This document shows positions 4,703-24,079 of a stretch of DNA of 64,000 bases, one piece after another. The notes below the pieces were generated by a model. That model had not been told where the DNA came from and searched no databases. It saw only the letters and a program-made list of their open reading frames with translations. The DNA lies in IMG/VR virus record IMGVR_UViG_3300037086_000360, positions 186,001 through 250,000 of that record; one strand, given 5' to 3'. The first letter of the stretch is position 1, and every line of letters begins with the position of its first letter. Made by a program: the position numbers and the translations under genes.

Positions 4703-5068
4703 ATGAAGATAAGAACTGGGTTCGTGTCTAATAGTTCCACTAGTTCATTTATTGCAGTTGGTTTTAAGTTTCCTGAAAAGCCCGCCAAGATTCCAAAGAA
4801 ATACAACGAAATGGTCAGAGTCGATAGAGAGAATGAAGAATATTTCTTCATTTCAGAGATCATCGGCTGGGAATATGGTGAAGAGCATAAGCTTGATGAT
4901 TACCAAAAGAAGTTCGATAAGGCAAAGACTTCTGCTGAAAGGGCCATGGCAGACTTTGATGTCGAGGCCAAGATTGCAGTCTATACAAACATGACTGATA
5001 TGGGTGGAGAATCATGGCTTCAGTATATGGACGAAGAAGACGAGGAAGAGGAAGATGAGATTTCCTAA
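4703..5068 (+). CDS. Conserved phage protein with N-terminal MKIRxGFVSNSSxSSF motif
   Basis: MKIRTGFVSNSSTSSF, a motif recurrent in large phage genomes; GAGGAG RBS. Confidence 0.7.
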   Translation: MKIRTGFVSNSSTSSFIAVGFKFPEKPAKIPKKYNEMVRVDRENEEYFFISEIIGWEYGEEHKLDDYQKKFDKAKTSAERAMADFDVEAKIAVYTNMTDMGGESWLQYMDEEDEEEEDEIS

Positions 5069-5450
5069 AAAGGTTGCCTCTCTAGAGAAAATCACCCTCC
5101 TCATCAATGGTCATAAGATTCGCACAGAAGTTGCGCGAACAGACGAAGAAAAAGAACATGGTTTAATGGGAAGAAAAGACTTGGGTCCTCGAGACGCTAT
5201 GCTTTTCATCGAAGATAGTCGTCCGTCTCTCTGGATGAAAGACACTCCCACAGCTCTTTCTGCTGCTTGGGTGTCTGCTAAGGGAAAGATCCTTGGCATT
5301 GTTGATATGGAGCCCCTTTCAGAAGAAATCTATGTTTCACCACTTCATACTCACTTTGCAATTGAAATGCGCCAAGGCGCTTTTGCAGCCCTTGGAATTG
5401 AAAGGGGTGCGATGGTTATTTTTCCACTCGGATTTCAGGTAAAGAAGTAA
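5055..5450 (+). CDS. DUF192 family protein
   Basis: EVARTDEEKEHGLMGR, MLF, WMKDT, AIEM..G motifs. Confidence 0.85.
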   Translation: MRFPKKVASLEKITLLINGHKIRTEVARTDEEKEHGLMGRKDLGPRDAMLFIEDSRPSLWMKDTPTALSAAWVSAKGKILGIVDMEPLSEEIYVSPLHTHFAIEMRQGAFAALGIERGAMVIFPLGFQVKK

Positions 5451-5662
5451 TGTGCATAGATGGCAAGAAACATTCTTTAATCGAAATCTATAGCTCTGGC
5501 AGTGACGCAGAGGCAGACGTCATAAGATGGTGTTACGAATGTGGAGCAATTGTGGTCGATACCGACTATGATGGAAGAACTAATGCTGGCGCTGTGTTTG
5601 CAATGAGACGCCCTAATAATTTTGTAAAAACGAAAAAGACGGAAACAGGCATTAATAGATAA
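5450..5662 (+). CDS. Small hypothetical protein (WCxxCG motif)
   Basis: RWCYECGA; translationally coupled. Confidence 0.55.
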   Translation: MCIDGKKHSLIEIYSSGSDAEADVIRWCYECGAIVVDTDYDGRTNAGAVFAMRRPNNFVKTKKTETGINR

Positions 5663-5679
5663 AAAAGTAGGAGATAAAA

Positions 5680-5910
5680 ATGAGCACGCTTTCAACAGAC
5701 AACATCGAATTAGTAGAAAGATTTCAAAACATGGTTTCGACACAATTGGACCTTATTGAGAGATATTCTCGAAAAGGCAGCTCGGTCGCAGGTCTCAACA
5801 ATAAGCTTGACGTCCAGCTTGGAAATCTGATTGCTGGACTTGGTAGATTTACACGCCATTTCGAGCAGAGCCCCGTGGTTGATGAAAAGAAATCTGCAAA
5901 AAAGTCGTAG
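5680..5910 (+). CDS. Hypothetical protein
   Basis: AGGAG RBS. Confidence 0.6.
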   Translation: MSTLSTDNIELVERFQNMVSTQLDLIERYSRKGSSVAGLNNKLDVQLGNLIAGLGRFTRHFEQSPVVDEKKSAKKS

Positions 5911-5949
5911 ATCTTGCATACTTCTATTCGAAAGGCAAAGATAAGAACG

Positions 5950-6072
5950 ATGTCGTAGATTTCTTCTTCTACTACTAACTCTCGCCACTCAATTCTAAAT
6001 CACAACACAGAACCGATTTTCTCACAAACCAGGAGGTTATCTATGTCATAGACATTAATGCCACCTCCTTGA
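5950..6072 (+). promoter_or_regulatory. Putative translational leader with two in-frame Met-Ser-amber minigenes, ending PPP-stop
   Basis: One frame: ATG TCG TAG ... AGG AGG TTA TCT ATG TCA TAG ACA TTA ATG CCA CCT CCT TGA; AGGAGGT (6031-37) pairs with ACCTCCT (6063-69). Confidence 0.6.
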
Positions 6073-6117
6073 CGTTTGTCGTCGTCTGATCACAACACAA
6101 ACTAAAGGAGAAAAACA

Positions 6118-6645
6118 ATGGAAACCACCACTGTTGAAAAAAAGGTCTTCACCCCCAGGAATTACATTTGCAGCAAGGAGAAATACCTTGAGCTTAGGGC
6201 TCTTCAGAAAAAGACGATCGAAATTGGAAGACTCGATCGTCAGGCCAAGGCTGCATACATCGCTGCTCGTCGTAAGTTTTATCACGACAAGGGCATGACT
6301 GCTCCTAACCATTGGGGCTACGATGAAAAGAAAAACGTAGCGATTGATTATGACAAGGAAAACGGGTTCAAATACGATGGACTTCAGTCTGGATTTTCCG
6401 ACAAAGAGAAAGCCCGTTATTTGAACATCATTTACGGTATTGCCCGTGGAAAACCCTATGATAAAATTGAGCAAAGAATCACTGAGGGCAATGAGATCAG
6501 TGAATACCGTGTAGAGAAGTATTGTAAGCAGTTTGGAATCGATTTCTCCGCGGTAAAGGGTTTTATTTGGCCTTACAACACCGAGAAGGTTCTACCCAAA
6601 GATGGACTTGGCAAGACCACTCTCAAGATCACGAGGAAGGCATAA
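6118..6645 (+). CDS. Conserved phage hypothetical protein (RxxxIxYGxxRGKPYxxIE motif)
   Basis: ARYLNIIYGIARGKPYDKIE; AAGGAG RBS. Confidence 0.7.
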   Translation: METTTVEKKVFTPRNYICSKEKYLELRALQKKTIEIGRLDRQAKAAYIAARRKFYHDKGMTAPNHWGYDEKKNVAIDYDKENGFKYDGLQSGFSDKEKARYLNIIYGIARGKPYDKIEQRITEGNEISEYRVEKYCKQFGIDFSAVKGFIWPYNTEKVLPKDGLGKTTLKITRKA

Positions 6646-6646
6646 A

Positions 6647-7009
6647 ATGGCAGATGAAGTCAAACAGGTGATTGTGGTAAATATGGCCGTTCCATTTCCT
6701 CTCGGAAGATTGATGGCTCAAATTGCTCATGCTTCCATGCTCAACATCGTTAATCGTGGAACTTGGAATGGAGACAAGTTTTCCATTGATGCGGACGATT
6801 TGGCCCTAAGATTTTGGCTTAAGGATCATTATACAAAAGTCGTATGCAAGGCTTGGGGCAAGGAGCAGATGATGAAGATCAAAGCTGAAGCTGAGAAAAG
6901 AAAACTTTACGTTGCGCTAATGGAGGAAGAGGGGTTTATTACAGCACTCGCTATTGGTCCTGCGGATGTGAAAGATCTTTCTTTCACTGACACTTTAGCA
7001 TTGGTATGA
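6647..7009 (+). CDS. Divergent PTH2-family peptidyl-tRNA hydrolase
   Basis: KQVIVVN, GRLMAQIAHAS, TKVV, TALAIGP; lacks the canonical DAGxT motif. Confidence 0.8.
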   Translation: MADEVKQVIVVNMAVPFPLGRLMAQIAHASMLNIVNRGTWNGDKFSIDADDLALRFWLKDHYTKVVCKAWGKEQMMKIKAEAEKRKLYVALMEEEGFITALAIGPADVKDLSFTDTLALV

Positions 7010-7037
7010 ATGTGGCGGAGCTGGTCTCCGCCACGTT

Positions 7038-7110
7038 CTCGCTGTAGCTCGAATCTTGGTAGAGCACCCGGTCAGCCGGGAGGTTGGAGGTCCGAATCCT
7101 TCTGGCGAGG
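7038..7110 (+). tRNA. tRNA-like element with 4-nt anticodon loop
   Basis: Acceptor CTCGCTG/TGGCGAG, D-arm, T-arm GGAGG-TCCGAAT-CCTTC; anticodon arm CCCGG-TCAG-CCGGG. Confidence 0.7.
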
Positions 7111-7117
7111 TTTTCTT

Positions 7118-7193
7118 TCCGCTGTAGCTCGAATTTGGCAGAGCGTCTAGTCGAAAGATTAGAAGGTTGGAGGTTCAAGTCCTTCCGGCGGAG
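7118..7193 (+). tRNA. tRNA-like element with GAAA tetraloop replacing the anticodon loop
   Basis: Acceptor TCCGCTG/CGGCGGA; arm TCTAGTC-GAAA-GATTAGA; T-arm GGAGG-TTCAAGT-CCTTC. Confidence 0.7.
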
Positions 7194-7216
7194 TTATTTT
7201 GCATATGTCTTTATAT

Positions 7217-7288
7217 CTCTTCGTAGCTCAACGGTAGAGCAAGAATCCCTAAAATTCTAGGTCGCGGGCTCGACACCCGCCGGAGAGG
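7217..7288 (+). tRNA. tRNA with CTA anticodon (amber suppressor-like; atypical C33 and T-loop)
   Basis: Acceptor CTCTTCG/CGGAGAG; anticodon arm AGAAT-CCCTAAA-ATTCT; T-arm GCGGG-CTCGACA-CCCGC. Confidence 0.65.
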
Positions 7289-7292
7289 CCTT

Positions 7293-7366
7293 GGTCCTGT
7301 AGCTCAGATGGTCAGAGCAACGGATTCTAACCCCGTCGGTCGAGGGTTCGAGCCCCTCCAGGATCT
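7293..7366 (+). tRNA. tRNA with CTA anticodon (amber suppressor-like, Arg-like body)
   Basis: Acceptor GGTCCTG/CAGGATC; 17-nt arm ACGGA-TTCTAAC-CCCGT puts CTA at 34-36; T-arm GAGGG-TTCGAGC-CCCTC. Confidence 0.7.
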
Positions 7367-7867
7367 CTAGATAGTTGGATCGTGAAGTTTTTTGATTGCG
7401 TATGAGAATGCGCTATAAAAGTCTTTTGAAGAAACCCACTTATTCCTTAGAATTACCCTTTCACTTTCTTCATCGAAGAAAACACGGATCAAATCTTTAG
7501 CATTTTTCAACATCCATTTATCATATCTATGAATTCGTTTTGCCAAGTATGTGTAAGCAATGTCGAACATTAGTTCATAATCTTTTTCAGTTTGTACTGG
7601 TGGTAAATCTTTTTTGACTCTATATGGTCTGAGATTTCTCCACTTACTCGTTGCACTTGGCCAATTTGTTTCAGCAGAATAGCCTCTAATCACACCCTGC
7701 GCAAATACCGTGATTTTGTCATCAGCTACATCAGGATTGCCACTGAAGTCAATGTTTCCATGACTGAGTTGGGCTGGAGTGGTAGTATCTCGCCAACCAA
7801 GAGAAATGATATCTTTATACGATGGCAACTGTTTGATTTTTTCATGGTCAAAATTGAAATGTTTCAT
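7367..7867 (-). CDS. Hypothetical protein
   Basis: Minus-strand ORF MKHFNFDHEK...; AAGATAA motif just upstream on the minus strand (7873-7879). Confidence 0.65.
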   Translation of the reverse strand: MKHFNFDHEKIKQLPSYKDIISLGWRDTTTPAQLSHGNIDFSGNPDVADDKITVFAQGVIRGYSAETNWPSATSKWRNLRPYRVKKDLPPVQTEKDYELMFDIAYTYLAKRIHRYDKWMLKNAKDLIRVFFDEESERVILRNKWVSSKDFYSAFSYAIKKLHDPTI

Positions 7868-10872: not shown

Positions 10873-12705
10873 ATGAATCAACCAACTCCCAAAGCTCCCA
10901 ACATGCGTAAAAATATCGCTATTGTGGCCATACTGCTAATAGGCTATTTTGTTTTTCAGTTTTTTATTGGAGGTGGAACTACTCCAGAAATCAGCTATAG
11001 TACTTTTAAAAAGGCCCTAATTGACGGTAGGATCCAACAAGTTTCTGTTTCAACTACTGAGATCCGTGGAGTAATGAAAGATAAAGAAATTGAGAAGCAG
11101 TTTTCAACCATTCGCGTAGATGATCCAGAATTGACGAAATTACTCGAATCCAAAAATGTTCAATACTCTGGAAAAATCCAGAGCAACTTCTTATCCAATC
11201 TTTTATGGATCATAATTCCTTTTGCTCTTCTATATTTCTTTTTCATGCGACAAACTGGTGGAGCGGGCACTAATGTTCTCTCATTTGGAAAGAGTAGGGC
11301 GAAACTCAACCAACCTCTGATTGGAAAAAAGATCTCATTTAAAGATGTCGCTGGAGTTGATGAGGCGAAAGAAGAGCTTCAAGAGGTTGTAGATTTTCTG
11401 AAGACTCCCCAGCGCTTTCAGCAATTGGGTGGAAGAATCCCTCGTGGAATCCTTTTAATTGGAGCTCCTGGCACCGGCAAGACACTTCTTGCAAGGGCGG
11501 TCGCCGGAGAGGCTGGGGTTCCATTTTTCAGTATTTCTGGATCTGAGTTTGTTGAAATGTTTGTAGGAGTTGGAGCTGCGAGAGTAAGAGATCTCTTCGC
11601 TCAAGCGATGTCAAAAGCCCCTTGTATCGTTTTTATCGACGAACTTGATGCCCTGGGAAGAGCTCGAGGATTTTCTCCAGTTGGTGGATTTGATGAGAGA
11701 GAGCAAACTCTCAACCAACTCCTTACAGAGATGGATGGTTTTGATACTCGAGTTGGCATCATCATCATGGCTGCTACGAACAGACCGGAGATTCTTGACT
11801 CAGCTCTCATGAGACCTGGAAGATTTGACCGACAGGTTCTTGTTGATAGGCCAGATCTTGTTGGTCGAGAAGCCATTCTCAAGGTTCATTCAGAAGGGAT
11901 CAAGATGGCTGAGAACGTTGATCTCAAAACCATTGCTCAGAGAACTCCAGGATTTGTCGGAGCAGATCTCGCCAACATCATGAATGAGGCAGCCCTTCTT
12001 GCTGCAAGACGCAACAAGACTGAAGTTATGATGGATGAGTTTAGTGAGGCTATCGATCGTGTTGTTGCTGGTCTAGAAAAGAAAAAAAGGCTGATCAGTC
12101 CATCAGAGAAGAAAATTGTGGCTTATCACGAGGCTGGTCATGCCATTGTTTCCCATTTCTCTGGAAAGGGTGATGAAGTCCATAAGATTTCCATTATTCC
12201 TCGTGGAATTGCTGCTCTTGGCTACACAATCAATCTTCCTACAGAAGATCGTTACTTGATGACTCAGAAAGAGCTTGAAGCAAGGCTCGCTACTCTTCTT
12301 GGTGGAAGAGTCGCGGAAGAGCTCTTCATTCAGGACGTTTCCACTGGAGCCTCAAGTGACCTGATGAAGGCAACAGAGATTGCGAAAGCTATGGTCAAAG
12401 AATATGGAATGAGCTCTCTTGGACTTTCTTCTTATGAGAGACCATCAAATCCATTTCTCAAAGATAATTCTTTCTTCCCTTCTGAAAAAGATTATTCAGA
12501 AAAAGTAGCGGCACAAATTGATGAAGAAGTTAAAAACATGCTCATTAAAGCACACGATAAAGCTGTGGTTATCCTTAACACCAAGAAACAGCTTATGGAA
12601 GACTTGTCGAAACTTCTTCTTGAAAAAGAAGTCGTAGAGAAAGATGAGTTTATAAAACTCATGACAGAAGAGAAGCTGGAAGAATTGCCGCGCGCAGAAG
12701 CATAG
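10873..12705 (+). CDS. ftsH: ATP-dependent zinc metalloprotease FtsH
   Basis: Two N-terminal TMs, Walker A GAPGTGKT, Walker [25 protein letters not shown]. Confidence 0.97.
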
Positions 12706-13849: not shown

Positions 13850-14947
13850 ATGGATGAATCTGACAAACAAGACCAGGAGTTCCCTCCAGGTACAGTGCCA
13901 TCGGACCAGTGGAATGACTGGCGATGGCAAATGCGGAATCGAGTTAAAAACATTGAAGACATTAAGACATTGGGATTATGGAAAGATGACACATTGCCTA
14001 ATCCAAAGCGTCTTCCCTTCACGGTAACCCCTTATTATTTGAAAGTCGCTCTCAATTCGAAAGCTCTTCAAAAAACTTTCGTGCCGAACATGAGTGAAAA
14101 CATTGTGACATCTGACTGTACGGATGATCCTCTTGCAGAAGAACATGACTCTCCTGTCAAATGCATCGTACATCGATATCCAGACAGAGTTCTGTTCCTT
14201 GCAACAGATCTTTGTGCTACTTATTGTCGCTATTGTACAAGAAGCCGAGTGATAGAGCAAAATGGATTTACTAAGTCTGAGTGGGAAAAGGGATTCGAAT
14301 ACATCAGAGAACACGAAGAAGTTCGAGACGTTCTTATCTCTGGTGGAGACCCTCTCACATATGACGATGATAATCTTGAGTATTTGATTTCAAGCATTAG
14401 AGCAATTTCTCATGTCGAAATCATAAGAATTGGTACCAAAGTTCCAGTCGTTCTTCCCCAAAGAATAACCCCAGAACTGGTGGCAATGCTTAAGAAGTAT
14501 CATCCGTTATTCATGAGCATTCATTTCACCCATCCCGACGAACTCACAGAGGAATGTAAGACTGCATGCTTAATGCTTGCTGATGCAGGAATCCCTCTCG
14601 GAAGTCAAACAGTTTTGTTGAATGATGTGAATGATAATCTCTATATTCTGAAAGCTCTGTTCCAGGGTCTGTTAAAGATTAGAGTTCGCCCCTATTATCT
14701 CTATCAGTGTGATGTTGTTCAAGGAGCTGCCCATTTTAGAACTCCTTTGGACGTGGGCATCAGGATGATTGAGGGATTAAGAGGATGGACTTCTGGATAT
14801 GCTGTTCCACAATTTGTAATTGACTTACCGAATGGTGGTGGAAAAACACCGGTCATTCCAAATTATGTGGTTGGAACTGAAGGAAAGAACATTGTCTTCA
14901 GAAATTATGAGGGCCAATCCTATCTCTTTCCCGATATAGCATCATGA
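13850..14947 (+). CDS. kamA: Lysine 2,3-aminomutase (KamA family radical SAM)
   Basis: WNDWRWQ, HRYPDRVL, CATYCRYC, SGGDPL, PYYLYQCD, GGGKTP. Confidence 0.93.
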   Translation: MDESDKQDQEFPPGTVPSDQWNDWRWQMRNRVKNIEDIKTLGLWKDDTLPNPKRLPFTVTPYYLKVALNSKALQKTFVPNMSENIVTSDCTDDPLAEEHDSPVKCIVHRYPDRVLFLATDLCATYCRYCTRSRVIEQNGFTKSEWEKGFEYIREHEEVRDVLISGGDPLTYDDDNLEYLISSIRAISHVEIIRIGTKVPVVLPQRITPELVAMLKKYHPLFMSIHFTHPDELTEECKTACLMLADAGIPLGSQTVLLNDVNDNLYILKALFQGLLKIRVRPYYLYQCDVVQGAAHFRTPLDVGIRMIEGLRGWTSGYAVPQFVIDLPNGGGKTPVIPNYVVGTEGKNIVFRNYEGQSYLFPDIAS

Positions 14948-16809: not shown

Positions 16810-17228
16810 TGCGACGATGGCTTACAGCATGGACACCTGAGTTAGCAAGAAAAGAAATGATAGCCAGGGAGCTTAGAAGAACTAGGCCCCTGGTTTCTTT
16901 TCCGCTTCTCAAAAAAGTGTACGACAAATTTGGAATCTTTTGGGTGACAATGCACCATGTTGAAGATATGGATGAACATCTCTGGAGTAAAATGCATGAT
17001 CTAAATAGACATGGACTCTTAGAGCTTTCTGAGTGGAAAAAAGAAATCAATCCAACTCCCTCAAGAGGTCAAAAACTTGCAAACTATTGGAGAGTAACTC
17101 CACTTGGTTTGATAGCCCTTACAAAATTTTATAGTGTCAAAGATGAAGACGTACACAAAGTTAGCAAATATTTGTTGGACCCAGAAGGAGATAAGAATGA
17201 GGCGACTGTCTTGGCAAAACGATATTGA
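16809..17228 (+). CDS. Hypothetical protein (possible winged helix)
   Basis: Coupled ORF; YWRVTPLG wing-like motif. Confidence 0.5.
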   Translation: MRRWLTAWTPELARKEMIARELRRTRPLVSFPLLKKVYDKFGIFWVTMHHVEDMDEHLWSKMHDLNRHGLLELSEWKKEINPTPSRGQKLANYWRVTPLGLIALTKFYSVKDEDVHKVSKYLLDPEGDKNEATVLAKRY

Positions 17229-17808
17229 ACCCGAGATTCCAGACAGAAAATTACCGATAAACAACAATAAAAAAGATGATGATCAACAATTGGTCGAACA
17301 CATTGATGGTCACATTTACTTTTATTCAGATGTGACTTCCCTATCAGTAATTAAACTCAACAAAGTAATAAGAGAAATCACAAACAATATGCTTCCATAT
17401 AAAGAAGATGGATTGGTGTTGAAGCTTCATATCAACAGTGATGGTGGAGTTCTTCTTGATGGACTTGCCGCTCTCGATTCAATTATTTCTAATGCACTTC
17501 CCATCCATACCTATGTAGAAGGTGGAGCTGCCTCAGCCGCCACTCTTATTTCAGTCGCAGGTAAAAAAAGATTCATGCACAGACACTCTTTCATGCTTAT
17601 CCACCAAATGTCAAGCAGACTGTGGGGCAAGTATGAGGAGATAAAAGACGACAAAGAAAACTGTGATCGATTCATGAAAATGATCAAGGATATTTACAAG
17701 GAATATACAAAAGTTCCTATGAAAAAGATAGATGAAATTCTCAAACATGATTTGTGGTTTGACGCAGATCAATGTCTTGAATATGGGATGATAGATGAGA
17801 TAGTCTAG
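17197..17808 (+). CDS. clpP: ClpP-like protease proteolytic subunit
   Basis: HINSDGG, AASAATLI (catalytic Ser), MLIHQ, DLWFDADQCLEYGMIDEI. Confidence 0.88.
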   Translation: MRRLSWQNDIEPEIPDRKLPINNNKKDDDQQLVEHIDGHIYFYSDVTSLSVIKLNKVIREITNNMLPYKEDGLVLKLHINSDGGVLLDGLAALDSIISNALPIHTYVEGGAASAATLISVAGKKRFMHRHSFMLIHQMSSRLWGKYEEIKDDKENCDRFMKMIKDIYKEYTKVPMKKIDEILKHDLWFDADQCLEYGMIDEIV

Positions 17809-23804: not shown

Positions 23805-24079
23805 GGGGCCGTAAAGGTTTCGACTGAACAGTGTTGGGCTTAGCCGAAGTTTTTCTACAAAATAGACGCGAATAACTTCGCTCTCGCGGCATAGCCGCTC
23901 ACCTAACGGCATTTAGTTTTTTGCTTCTAGCTGTTGGGTAACAAAAAGCAAAGAACGGGTTCATTCAATGAAACTCCCGTAAAAAAGCGAATTGTGGTAT
24001 TTAGAATCCACCACTCTACGGTTCTACGGCAGGCGAAGGTCCTTTGTTCAGGACGGGATTTCGATTATCCCCGGCTCCA
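23805..24079 (+). ncRNA. ssrA: tmRNA (compact); tag (A)ANNFALAA
   Basis: GGGGCCG/CGGCTCC-A acceptor with G3.U; GGTTTCGAC 5' motif; tag GCG AAT AAC TTC GCT CTC GCG GCA TAG from 23868; T-arm near the 3' end. Confidence 0.92.

What the first reader, a model, noticed from the sequence alone, without database searches (positions are those of the whole stretch)
5950..7366. Candidate amber-readthrough / peptidyl-tRNA sensing circuit: Met-Ser-TAG leader, PTH2-like operon and CUA tRNAs
Seen: right after an AAGATAA motif, one reading frame encodes M-S-amber, 28 codons including AGG AGG, M-S-amber again, then TLMPPP-opal. The second minigene's SD (AGGAGGT) can pair with the PPP codons (ACCTCCT), and its ATG-TCA-TAG sits in an inner hairpin. 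Downstream come a conserved unknown gene, a divergent PTH2 and, in the same run, two tRNAs with CUA anticodons. Known: two-codon minigenes such as lambda bar cause peptidyl-tRNA drop-off that needs Pth, and PPP stalls ribosomes. Inference: the leader may sense amber termination or suppression, or peptidyl-tRNA load, and set expression of the hydrolase module. I do not recognise this arrangement as described.
Basis: partly seen in the sequence, partly recalled or inferred. Interest (0 to 1): 0.82.

Follow-up and report, generated by a model that had tools for sequence, protein, structure and literature searches.

The report
Amber-codon-gated leader before phage PTH2 operon
A short leader in front of a giant phage's "unknown gene, PTH2-like hydrolase, amber-suppressor tRNA" cassette is conserved across distant phages and looks like a natural switch that turns the operon on only when the stop codon UAG is read as an amino acid.

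Summary
Its core idea holds up against related sequences.

**The cassette.** The window is part of a 250-kb peat phage contig. Gene 6118-6645 (here "X") belongs to a phage-only family. In every relative with enough DNA, X is followed by a PTH2-like gene. Wherever DNA continues past that gene, a tRNA with a CUA anticodon follows.

**The leader.** In all 11 loci found through X homology, the DNA upstream of X has the same layout:
- a strong Shine-Dalgarno (SD) site, then ATG-NNN-TAG, where codon 2 varies and TAG never does;
- 3-5 sense codons in the same frame;
- CCN-CCN (Pro-Pro), usually followed directly by a stop.

The Pro-Pro codons form an anti-SD. In predicted folds it pairs with the SD of X across a small hairpin.

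**Independent checks.**
- A motif-only scan of IMG/VR found 17 stretches, 13 with this full layout.
- The same scan with TGA or TAA in place of TAG gave 8 and 4 stretches, nearly all inside coding regions.

**Best model (inferred, not tested).** Without suppression, the ribosome terminates at codon 3 and the SD of X stays paired. With UAG readthrough, the ribosome pauses at Pro-Pro-stop, sits on the anti-SD, and frees X and PTH2 for translation.

**Not part of the conserved device.** The first Met-Ser-TAG and the 28-codon spacer occur only in this phage and its closest relative.

I found no description of this element.

The parts
5938..5944 (+). AAGATAA motif just upstream of the first minigene. 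It is conserved in the close relative L003. Its role is unknown; it may be a -10-like promoter element.
   Evidence: The motif is enriched in the window (32 found, 19 expected) and mostly on the + strand, but its contexts are heterogeneous.
5950..5958 (+). First minigene, ATG TCG TAG. It has no SD and sits in a hairpin spanning 5952-5975. It is specific to this lineage and is not part of the conserved device.
   Evidence: It is present only in the window and in L003. Other relatives have a single minigene.
5959..6042 (+). A 28-codon open stretch linking the two minigenes (27 codons in L003). It contains a pyrimidine tract, UUUUCUC (6017-6023), that can also pair with either SD.
   Evidence: The conserved nucleotide block here is read in different frames in the window and in L003 because of 2-nt and 1-nt indels.
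6031..6037 (+). SD1 (AGGAGGT), the ribosome-binding site of the sensor ORF, 6 nt before its ATG.
   Evidence: A strong SD lies at the same place in all 11 loci found through X homology.
6043..6072 (+). Sensor leader ORF: ATG TCA TAG, then in the same frame ACA TTA ATG CCA CCT CCT TGA. The amber codon is at 6049-6051. The Pro-Pro-Pro-stop is at 6061-6072. The anti-SD ACCUCCUU is at 6063-6070.
   Evidence: ATG, TAG and CC.CC are invariant alignment columns across 11 loci, while codon 2 and the spacer codons vary.
6074..6102 (+). Small hairpin (GUUUGU paired with ACAAAC) between the leader stop and the SD of X. It is enclosed by the anti-SD:SD2 helix.
   Evidence: A hairpin of unrelated sequence sits at this position in nearly all relatives, with z-scores down to -4.
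6104..6110 (+). SD2 (AAAGGAG), the ribosome-binding site of gene X. It is predicted to pair with the anti-SD.
6118..6645 (+). Gene X, 175 aa, a member of a phage-only family with the motif ARYLNIIYGIxKGKxYxQIE. The model is confident but matches no known fold, so its function is unknown.
6647..7009 (+). PTH2-like gene, 120 aa. Its start lies 1 nt after the X stop, so translation is probably coupled to X.
7012..7034 (+). A 9-bp stem-loop directly after the PTH2 stop, with no U-tract. It is conserved in L003.
7038..7110 (+). tRNA-like gene 1. Its anticodon arm is replaced by a 5-bp stem and a tetraloop, so it has no anticodon.
   Evidence: Neither ARAGORN nor Rfam calls it in the window. The L003 copy has a 7-bp stem and a 6-nt loop.
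7117..7194 (+). tRNA-like gene 2. Its anticodon arm is a 7-bp stem capped by a GNRA tetraloop (GAAA here, GAGA in L003, with compensatory stem changes).
   Evidence: (Rfam tRNA, 40.9 bits).
7217..7290 (+). tRNA(CUA) a, with anticodon loop CCCUAAA. Position 33 is C instead of the usual U.
   Evidence: The anticodon stem differs from L003 by compensatory changes while the loop is kept.
7293..7367 (+). tRNA(CUA) b, with anticodon loop UUCUAAC.

Best explanation
The segment from about 6027 to 6117 is a cis-acting translational attenuator whose input is the decoding of UAG.

- Ribosomes load at the strong SD1 and start at AUG 6043.
- OFF state: if UAG at codon 3 is read as stop, the ribosome leaves after two codons. 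The CCUCC(UU) that spells the Pro codons stays base-paired with the SD of gene X across a small hairpin, so X and the coupled PTH2-like gene are translated poorly.
- ON state: if UAG is decoded, presumably by the phage's own tRNA(CUA) genes just downstream, the ribosome runs six more codons and pauses at Pro-Pro-Pro-UGA. That is a slow peptide-bond and termination context. The paused ribosome physically covers the anti-SD, so the SD of X is free and X and PTH2 are translated.

The cassette therefore reports 'amber suppression is working in this cell' and licenses X and PTH2 accordingly.

Shown: the anatomy, its conservation, the pairing potential, and the link to PTH2 and tRNA(CUA).

Inferred: that readthrough happens, that the ribosome pauses at Pro-Pro-stop, and the sign of the response.
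For: 1. The cassette of X, PTH2 and tRNA(CUA) recurs in relatives whose X is 26-85% identical.
2. All 11 loci found through X homology carry SD, ATG-NNN-TAG, 3-5 codons, then CCN-CCN in frame. A stop follows directly in all but L012 and L019 (8 of 10 lineages, counting the window and L003 as one). The gap to the X start is 45-58 nt (17 nt in L012).
3. In the alignment, ATG, TAG and CC.CC are invariant while codon 2 takes eight forms.
4. Treated as independent draws, the odds are about 5e-6 for TAG, 5e-5 for the frame and 1e-9 for the adjacent stop. These leaders are homologous, so the numbers measure conservation rather than independent invention.
5. In L021 the anti-SD has decayed to CCCCCUU but Pro-Pro-stop is kept. 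This argues for the codons and not only the pairing.
6. The anti-SD can pair with SD1 or SD2 at similar energies. Its duplex with SD2 is in the best 0.2-6% of all 10-mers of each locus.
7. With a ribosome masked at UAG, the minimum-free-energy fold in most loci is anti-SD:SD2 enclosing the hairpin. With a ribosome masked at Pro-stop, the probability that SD2 and the AUG are unpaired rises above the UAG-terminating state in all 11 loci. The means are 0.33 free, 0.35 terminating and 0.54 stalled. Six further loci behave the same way. In L032 the helix also buries the start codon.
8. In L012 the readthrough frame runs on to 4 nt before SD2, which would open it directly.
9. A scan of IMG/VR by motif alone gave 17 stretches, 13 with the full layout. 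These include a new X-PTH2-tRNA(CUA) locus, one locus with a PF01981 gene downstream, and one with tRNA(CUA). The TGA and TAA versions gave 8 and 4 stretches. Nearly all lie inside long ORFs and none is near X, PTH2 or a suppressor tRNA.
10. The nucleotide after TAG is A in 10 of 17 leaders. From my own knowledge, a 3' purine favours amber suppression in E. coli.
11. Peat metatranscriptome libraries hold contigs 100% identical to 5577-6486. This is weak evidence, since DNA carry-over is not excluded.
Against: - There is no experiment. Readthrough, pausing and the sign of regulation all come from sequence and thermodynamic models.
- In the window itself the modelled gain in SD2 accessibility is nil (0.30 free, 0.23 terminating, 0.29 stalled). 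The extra upstream UUUUCUC tract can replace the anti-SD there.
- TAG is an ordinary stop for about 26% of genes in the window, and reading TAG as sense gives no ORF-length gain here or around the other cassettes. Whether these phages really reassign TAG is unproven, apart from one in-frame TAG in the PTH2 gene of L014.
- L012 and L019 lack a stop directly after Pro-Pro, and L022 has Gly-Pro.
- MAFFT plus RNAalifold gave no consensus structure. The structural argument therefore rests on per-sequence folds, not on formal covariation statistics.
Confidence: 0.55

Rival explanations
1. The device is the same, but the signal is host release factor 1 activity rather than the phage tRNA. The leader would measure the balance between termination and readthrough at UAG, for example after the phage inhibits or outcompetes RF1.
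For: The invariant TAG is read only by RF1 (PMC13602936). The logic resembles prfB, where an early in-frame stop senses RF2 (own knowledge). Nothing in the sequence separates 'more suppressor' from 'less RF1'.
Against: The cassette always carries tRNA(CUA) where DNA continues past PTH2. No RF gene or RF1 inhibitor is recognisable next to it. X has no known fold.
Confidence: 0.15
2. The element is a constitutive 'start-stop' or ribosome-standby site. The two-codon ORF and SD/anti-SD helices tune X translation or mRNA stability, and UAG is always read as stop. The in-frame Pro-Pro would then be a by-product of the anti-SD sequence.
For: Two-codon and start-stop ORFs that hold ribosomes are known in bacteria (own knowledge). 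SD1, the anti-SD and SD2 alone would make a workable RNA switch.
Against: - CCUCC could sit in any of three frames, yet it reads Pro-Pro in all 10 lineages.
- A stop follows directly in 8 of 10.
- The stop of the minigene is TAG in every case, although TAA is the commonest stop in these genomes.
- Pro-Pro-stop survives where the anti-SD has decayed (L021).
- The TGA and TAA motif controls find no such leaders near these cassettes.
Confidence: 0.1
3. The sensor is real but has the opposite sign: amber readthrough shuts X and PTH2 off. A queue behind the stalled ribosome, or pairing between SD1 and other elements, could cause this.
For: In the window the model shows no gain in SD2 exposure on stalling. 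The upstream UUUUCUC tract can capture SD2 once the anti-SD is occupied.
Against: SD2 exposure rises on stalling in the other 10 loci found through X homology and in the 6 extra loci. The L012 variant translates right up to SD2. The stalled ribosome ends about 30 nt before SD2, so it cannot block it sterically.
Confidence: 0.08
4. The leader senses peptidyl-tRNA load, like the lambda bar minigenes. Dipeptidyl-tRNA drops off the two-codon ORF and depletes a tRNA, and the leader adjusts PTH2 synthesis to hydrolase demand.
For: A PTH2-like gene is always downstream. Two-codon minigenes are the classic source of peptidyl-tRNA drop-off (own knowledge of lambda bar and pth).
Against: Codon 2 differs among relatives (Ser, Leu, Arg, Lys, Thr, Met), so no particular tRNA is monitored. 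The model does not explain the invariant TAG, the in-frame Pro-Pro-stop, or the link to tRNA(CUA).
Confidence: 0.05
5. The leader is an ordinary small protein gene in a TAG-recoded genome (a 9-42 aa peptide), or the repeated ATGTCGTAGA boxes are protein-binding sites on DNA.
For: In the window the upstream gene (stop TAG at 5908-5910), both minigenes and PPP-TGA share one open frame. The box occurs twice here, and a third near-copy overlaps the upstream stop.
Against: Apart from Met and Pro-Pro, the peptide is not conserved. The conserved spacer nucleotides are read in different frames in the window and in L003. In L003 the upstream gene ends in TAA in another frame. Other relatives have one box only.
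Confidence: 0.03

Closest known systems
Leader-peptide translational attenuation (ermC, cat, cmlA type)
   Same: A short ORF has its own SD. A ribosome paused at a defined place in the leader breaks a helix that hides the SD of the downstream gene.
   Different: Pausing is not triggered by a drug. Whether the ribosome reaches the pause site at all is gated by an in-frame UAG at codon 3. The pause motif is Pro-Pro-stop, and its codons are themselves the anti-SD.
prfB (RF2) autoregulation through an early in-frame stop codon
   Same: An in-frame stop early in a frame is used as a meter of how efficiently that stop is read.
   Different: There is no +1 frameshift site (no CUU U slippery sequence). 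The frame continues in phase. The output is exposure of the next gene's SD, not completion of the same protein. The stop is UAG rather than UGA.
tnaC and other nascent chains ending in Pro-stop
   Same: Slow termination with peptidyl-tRNA(Pro) in the P site and a stop in the A site holds a ribosome at the leader's end to control downstream genes.
   Different: There is no long sensor peptide or small-molecule ligand. The leader is only 8-10 residues. Control is translational (SD release), not Rho-dependent.
Lambda bar minigenes (two-codon ORFs that are toxic when Pth is limiting)
   Same: An SD followed by AUG, one sense codon and a stop, in a phage, with a functional link to peptidyl-tRNA hydrolase.
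   Different: In bar the effect depends on the particular second codon and tRNA. Here codon 2 is free and the stop is always UAG. Here the minigene sits in front of the phage's own PTH2-like gene and continues in frame to Pro-Pro-stop.
Phage 'code change modules' (suppressor tRNA, aminoacyl-tRNA synthetase and release factor; Borges et al., bioRxiv 10.1101/2021.08.26.457843)
   Same: A compact cassette written in standard code that contains the suppressor tRNA of a large phage.
   Different: The partners are X and a PTH2-like protein, not a synthetase or release factor. That paper does not mention a hydrolase or a leader, and a 2026 jumbo-phage survey does not mention a peptidyl-tRNA hydrolase.
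Engineered amber-codon leader switches (TAG placed in trp/tna leader peptides; reviewed in PMC6412442)
   Same: Translation of a leader beyond an inserted UAG, which depends on a suppressor tRNA, decides expression of the downstream gene.
   Different: Those are synthetic and act on transcription termination. This one is natural, conserved and apparently translational.

Membership tests
PTH2 (PF01981) peptidyl-tRNA hydrolase | Sequence match to the family profile above the curated threshold | tested here: met
   57.8 bits against a cut-off of 23, covering profile positions 1-105 of 115. phmmer matches archaeal Pth2 structures 1WN2, 1RZW and 1XTY.
PTH2 (PF01981) peptidyl-tRNA hydrolase | Conservation of the residues implicated in catalysis in archaeal Pth2. 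From my memory of work on the Sulfolobus enzyme, these are the Lys of the G-K-(I/L) motif and the Asp and Thr of the D-A-G-x-T loop. I did not verify this in a paper here. | tested here: inconclusive
   In the alignment to 1WN2 and 1RZW the Lys position is Arg (Gln in L012 and L016). D-A-G-L is E-E-G-F, and the following 7 residues are deleted. The protein may be active with altered chemistry or have another role.
PTH2 (PF01981) peptidyl-tRNA hydrolase | Hydrolysis of peptidyl-tRNA or N-blocked aminoacyl-tRNA | not testable with these tools
   Needs an enzyme assay.
Amber suppressor tRNA | Cloverleaf with a 7-nt anticodon loop carrying CUA at positions 34-36 | tested here: met
   ARAGORN and Rfam agree. 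The loops are conserved against L003 while both anticodon stems changed by compensatory substitutions. tRNA a has C33, which is unusual.
Amber suppressor tRNA | Is aminoacylated and decodes UAG on the ribosome | not testable with these tools
   Indirect only. In L014 an in-frame TAG in PTH2 aligns with the Gln of the archaeal G-Q-x-K-V-V motif. The CUA tRNAs of L012, L014 and L015 start with U1 and end so as to pair with A72, as tRNA-Gln does (and own knowledge).
Leader-ORF translational attenuator | Short ORF with its own ribosome-binding site directly upstream of the regulated gene | tested here: met
   SD1 lies 6 nt before ATG 6043, with the same layout in all 11 loci.
Leader-ORF translational attenuator | RNA pairing that sequesters the downstream SD and overlaps the leader ORF | tested here: met
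   This rests on prediction only. The anti-SD:SD2 helix appears in the minimum-free-energy folds of most loci, and its duplex energies are in the top 0.2-6% of background. No consensus came from RNAalifold on a MAFFT alignment.
Leader-ORF translational attenuator | Programmed ribosome pause within the leader that changes the pairing | not testable with these tools
   The Pro-Pro(-Pro)-stop motif is present and conserved in frame. That it pauses ribosomes is established knowledge for E. coli but is not shown here.
Lambda bar-type minigene | SD followed by AUG, one sense codon and a stop | tested here: met
Lambda bar-type minigene | The effect depends on a particular second codon and tRNA (AUA/Ile in bar) | tested here: not met
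   Codon 2 varies: TCA, TCG, CTG, CTA, CGG, AAG, ACG, ATG, TTG, TTA.
prfB-type programmed frameshift sensor | Slippery site and internal SD that direct a +1 shift at the in-frame stop | tested here: not met
   The conserved downstream signal (Pro-Pro-stop) is in the zero frame in all lineages.
TAG-recoded (code 15) phage genome | Many genes interrupted by in-frame TAG, TAG avoided as a stop, and higher coding density when TAG is read as sense | tested here: not met
   This applies to the window and the DNA next to the cassettes. TAG ends 27 of 105 ORFs. There is no coverage gain with TAG as sense (0.88 against 0.88). Same-frame neighbours are no commoner across TAG than across TAA or TGA. The other 186 kb of the contig, probably including the late genes, was not available.
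Known RNA families (Rfam 15) | Match to a curated covariance model in the leader | tested here: not met
   Only tRNA and tmRNA hits were found in the window at gathering thresholds.

The most novel reading that the evidence does not exclude
Amber-gated attenuators would be a previously unrecognised and widespread class of natural cis-regulatory element. Phages carrying UAG-suppressor tRNAs would use a two-codon ORF ending in UAG as a checkpoint. It reports that the infected cell's genetic code has been switched, and only then licenses a conserved effector pair. That pair is protein X, which has a new fold, and a divergent PTH2-like protein. Both would then be new players in phage code switching or in handling its side effects, such as peptidyl-tRNA or blocked suppressor tRNA.
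Probability: 0.45. Interest if true: 0.9.

Novelty: new variant of a known kind. Interest (0 to 1): 0.8.

Why it matters
How phages with reassigned stop codons time and control the switch from the host's code to their own is an open question. Only suppressor tRNAs, release factors and a few synthetases have been implicated so far.

A conserved leader whose logic depends on reading UAG would be the first natural sensor of genetic-code state. It would be a counterpart of the prfB meter for RF2 and of the amber-leader switches that synthetic biologists built by hand.

It also singles out two uncharacterised proteins, X and a divergent PTH2, as functionally tied to amber suppression.

The hypothesis is cheap to test with a roughly 100-nt reporter in laboratory strains that carry or lack a suppressor. 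If it works, the element is a ready-made, compact part for genetic-code-expansion circuits.

Tried and rejected
- **Whole-window TAG recoding.** I compared ORF coverage under four stop sets, same-frame neighbours across each stop, stop usage, and the distance to the next stop. There is no sign of recoding in the window or next to the cassettes.
- **Close relatives in public collections.**
  - GenBank phages hold only tRNA-level DNA matches and no match to X. PTH2-like genes in known jumbo phages and mycobacteriophages are about 30% identical and have no X beside them.
  - No relative of X exists in 185,579 species genomes.
- **22-mer at the X ribosome site.** Searched in IMG/VR, it returned only chance matches.
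- **Consensus RNA structure.** MAFFT plus RNAalifold on 11 leaders returned no structure, because the hairpins share no sequence and do not align. I used per-sequence constrained folds instead and did not build a covariance model.
- **Function of X.** All of the following were uninformative:
  - Pfam and PHROGs;
  - a profile search of the PDB;
  - a confident AlphaFold model (pLDDT 92.5) searched with Foldseek against the PDB, VIA-align wide, AFDB clusters and the ESM Atlas, plus a model of the C-terminal domain alone.

  The best scores were Z 5.2 on generic helical hairpins and TM below 0.35. A winged-helix resemblance is a weak lead only.
- **First genes behind the extra motif-found leaders.** They are not significantly X-like by hhalign.
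- **AAGATAA as a ribosome-site or promoter motif.** It is enriched, but its contexts are inconsistent.
- **Sigma-70 and terminator scans around the leader.** Nothing beyond chance.
- **One 130-codon gene from 5680 to 6072 read through three TAGs.** Rejected, because L003 has TAA in another frame.
- **Catalytic residues of Pth2.** I could not confirm them in the papers I reached.
Full report
**Where the window comes from.** The window is positions 186,001-250,000 of IMGVR_UViG_3300037086_000360, a 250,111-bp viral contig. Runs that hold it are peat metagenomes. GC content is 40%, most genes are on the + strand, and ribosome sites are SD-type.

Recognisable genes in the window:
- FtsH;
- a radical-SAM enzyme like lysine-2,3-aminomutase;
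- ClpP;
- a tmRNA;
- nucleases and homing endonucleases.

There are no structural genes, so this is an early or middle type of region.

**The observation.** All of the following lie in one frame:
- ATG TCG TAG at 5950-5958;
- 28 sense codons at 5959-6042, including AGG AGG;
- ATG TCA TAG at 6043-6051;
- ACA TTA ATG CCA CCT CCT TGA, ending at 6072.

AGGAGGT (6031-6037) is complementary to ACCTCCT (6063-6069), and the two pair in the minimum-free-energy fold.

Downstream lie:
- a 175-aa ORF, here called X (6118-6645), with no Pfam or PHROG match;
- a PTH2-like ORF (6647-7009; PF01981, E 1.5e-15);
- two tRNAs with CUA anticodons.

The 10-mer ATGTCNTAGA occurs only at these two places on both strands of the window.

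**The nearest relative.** A protein search found an 85%-identical X on a 732-kb JGI contig (L003) with the same gene order.

Features kept in the L003 leader:
- both ATG TCG TAG units;
- ATG CCG CCT CCT TGA, with a synonymous CCA to CCG change;
- a 27-codon open spacer.

However, the alignment needs a 2-nt and a 1-nt indel. As a result, the best-conserved spacer block is read in different frames in the two phages. The spacer is therefore conserved as nucleic acid, not as peptide.

Both CUA tRNAs keep their anticodon loops while their anticodon stems differ by compensatory changes. That is good evidence the CUA anticodon is under selection.

**The decisive comparison.** An exhaustive profile search found 78 members of the X family. 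I fetched loci through IMG/VR, JGI metagenomes and exact-protein look-ups.
- Wherever DNA extends downstream, X is followed by a PTH2-like gene.
- Where DNA goes further still, tRNA(CUA) follows.

Upstream of X, all 11 loci (10 lineages, with X 26-85% identical) show one layout:
- a strong SD;
- ATG-NNN-TAG;
- 3-5 sense codons in the same frame;
- CCN-CCN (GGT-CCC in one locus);
- a stop, which follows the Pro codons directly in all but L012 and L019 (8 of 10 lineages);
- 45-58 nt containing a small hairpin of unrelated sequence (17 nt, with no room for a separate hairpin, in L012);
- the SD and ATG of X.

In the alignment the invariant columns are ATG, TAG, CC.CC and the X start. Codon 2 takes eight forms in these 11 leaders and ten across all 17.

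In L021 the anti-SD has decayed to CCCCCUU but still reads Pro-Pro-stop. In L012 the readthrough frame continues to 4 nt before the SD of X.

**RNA logic.**
- The Pro-Pro/stop segment can pair with SD1 or with the SD of X at similar energies. Its duplex with the SD of X ranks in the best 0.2-6% of all 10-mers of each locus.
- I modelled a ribosome as an unpaired footprint. When it sits at UAG, the minimum-free-energy fold in most loci is the anti-SD paired to the SD of X, enclosing the hairpin.
- When it sits at Pro-stop, the mean probability that the SD and AUG of X are unpaired rises above the UAG-terminating state in all 11 loci. The means are 0.33 free, 0.35 terminating and 0.54 stalled.
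- The window is the weakest case (0.30, 0.23, 0.29). It and L003 have an extra UUUUCUC tract that can substitute for the anti-SD.
- The spacing of 3-5 codons places the anti-SD just beyond the leading edge of a ribosome terminating at UAG.

**An independent test.** I scanned IMG/VR with a pattern that encodes only the leader: GGAG, ATG NNN TAG, 15 nt, CCYCCN, TRA. It makes no reference to X.
- It returned 17 stretches.
- Thirteen have the full layout, with an SD-like site and ATG 49-66 nt downstream and the same predicted helix.
- These include the known contigs, a new X-PTH2-tRNA(CUA) locus (L030), loci with a PF01981 gene downstream (L026 group, 24.5 bits), and one with tRNA(CUA) (L035).
- Four stretches look random.

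With TGA or TAA in place of TAG the same pattern gave 8 and 4 stretches. Nearly all lie inside long ORFs and none is near X, PTH2 or a suppressor tRNA. One TAA case (L048/L051) has a similar layout.

**What it most likely does.** The simplest reading is a translational attenuator gated by UAG decoding.
- Termination at codon 3 leaves the SD of X sequestered.
- Readthrough carries the ribosome to Pro-Pro(-Pro)-stop, where it pauses on the anti-SD and frees X.
- PTH2 starts 1 nt after the X stop, so it is probably coupled.

That Pro-Pro and Pro-stop slow the ribosome is established for E. coli. This is from my own knowledge: the EF-P literature, SsrA tagging at C-terminal prolines, and tnaC.

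That it happens here is inference. I put the sensor idea at about 0.8 and the specific 'ON upon readthrough' model at 0.55.

**What remains open.**
- *Is TAG really reassigned?* In the window TAG ends 27 of 105 ORFs, including FtsH and ClpP. Reading it as sense gains nothing, here or around the other cassettes. This fits the published picture that code-change modules are written in standard code, but the late genes were not available. One direct hint exists: the PTH2 gene of L014 has an in-frame TAG that aligns with the Gln of the archaeal G-Q-x-K-V-V motif.
- *What do X and the PTH2-like protein do?* X gives a confident model (pLDDT 92.5) with no fold match. Relative to archaeal Pth2, the PTH2-like protein has Arg at the G-K-L lysine and a 7-residue deletion after the D-A-G motif. 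Its activity cannot be assumed.
- *What is the first minigene for?* It has no SD, lies in a hairpin, and is found only in the window and L003. I treat it as a lineage-specific addition of unknown value.

**Transcription.** Peat metatranscriptome libraries contain contigs 100% identical to 5577-6486. One spans 5687-6054, which covers the end of the upstream gene and the leader. This is compatible with transcription through the leader but does not exclude DNA carry-over.

**Literature.**
- The recoded-phage preprint describes suppressor tRNA, synthetase and release-factor modules, and mentions neither a hydrolase nor a leader.
- A 2026 jumbo-phage survey does not mention a peptidyl-tRNA hydrolase.
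- Full-text searches for combinations of suppressor tRNA, leader, anti-SD, PTH2 and phage found no description of such an element.
- A review describes engineered switches in which TAG is inserted into trp/tna leader peptides. This is the closest, and synthetic, analogue.

**Verdict.** The element is a new variant of leader-ORF attenuation with a new kind of input, conserved across a phage-only cassette. Interest is high, pending a simple reporter experiment.

Noticed in passing
window 7038-7110 and 7117-7194 (L003 6917-6998 and 7003-7080): Two tRNA-like genes have normal acceptor, D and T arms, but the anticodon arm is replaced by a closed stem. Gene 1 has 5 bp plus UCAG. Gene 2 has 7 bp plus a GNRA tetraloop (GAAA here, GAGA in L003, with compensatory stem changes). 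They have no anticodon and sit between PTH2 and the CUA tRNAs. They could be decoys, processing elements or non-decoding acceptors.
   Followed up: partly
window 7217-7290 (L003 7111-7186): tRNA(CUA) a has the anticodon loop CCCUAAA (CCCUAAC in L003), so position 33 is C instead of the near-universal U. The two CUA tRNAs of the window are unlike each other and may carry different amino acids.
   Followed up: partly
window 10873-12705, 13850-14947, 17134-17808, 23805-24079: A cluster of translation and protein quality-control genes lies near the cassette: FtsH (it and ClpP end in TAG), a radical-SAM protein like lysine-2,3-aminomutase (the enzyme type that makes beta-lysine for EF-P modification, relevant to poly-Pro stalls), ClpP, and a phage tmRNA with tag ANNFALAA.
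   Followed up: partly
L014 695-1078 (same contig as L023): The PTH2-like gene of this 47-kb phage contig has one in-frame TAG. It falls at the position of Gln in the archaeal G-Q-x-K-V-V motif. In that phage PTH2 itself would need amber suppression, probably as Gln.
   Followed up: partly
window 5680-6072: The upstream 76-aa gene ends in TAG (5908-5910, within AAGTCGTAGA, a third near-copy of the minigene box). It is in the same open frame as both minigenes down to TGA 6070-6072. L003 has TAA in another frame, so this is probably coincidence.
   Followed up: yes
window 5999-6009 and 6089-6099: An exact direct repeat, ATCACAACACA, has one copy in the spacer and one in the loop and 3' arm of the hairpin before the SD of X. 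The second copy and the whole stretch up to the X start are identical in L003. From the SD onward it is also identical in the 55%-identical relative L004.
   Followed up: partly
window, 32 sites (for example 2317, 5938, 9831, 39073, 43843, 53809): AAGATAA is enriched (32 found, 19 expected; 26 on the + strand). It often lies a few bases before start codons or in intergenic DNA. It may be a phage promoter or initiation motif.
   Followed up: partly
L048 1559-1600 and L051 4825-4866: A leader-like arrangement ends its two-codon ORF in TAA: GGAG, ATG GGG TAA, five codons, CCC CCT TAA, then an SD and ATG 43 nt later. It could be chance or an ochre analogue.
   Followed up: no
L032, about 1.8-3.3 kb downstream of its leader: A run of same-frame ORFs encoding a repeat-rich protein is interrupted only by TAG codons. 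This suggests that the phage reads TAG as sense in some genes.
   Followed up: no
window 7012-7034: A 9-bp GC-rich stem-loop lies directly after the PTH2 stop, with no U-tract. It is conserved in L003 with loop changes. It may be a processing or stabilising signal before the tRNA array.
   Followed up: no
window 7063-7179: One metatranscriptome library contains a short insert that ends exactly at 7179 against the sequencing adapter and starts at 7063. It spans the end of tRNA-like 1 and most of tRNA-like 2, at the highest depth of the region.
   Followed up: no
window 5004-5450: A DUF192 (PF02643) protein is encoded two genes upstream of the leader. It is also present at the same place in L003.
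   Followed up: no
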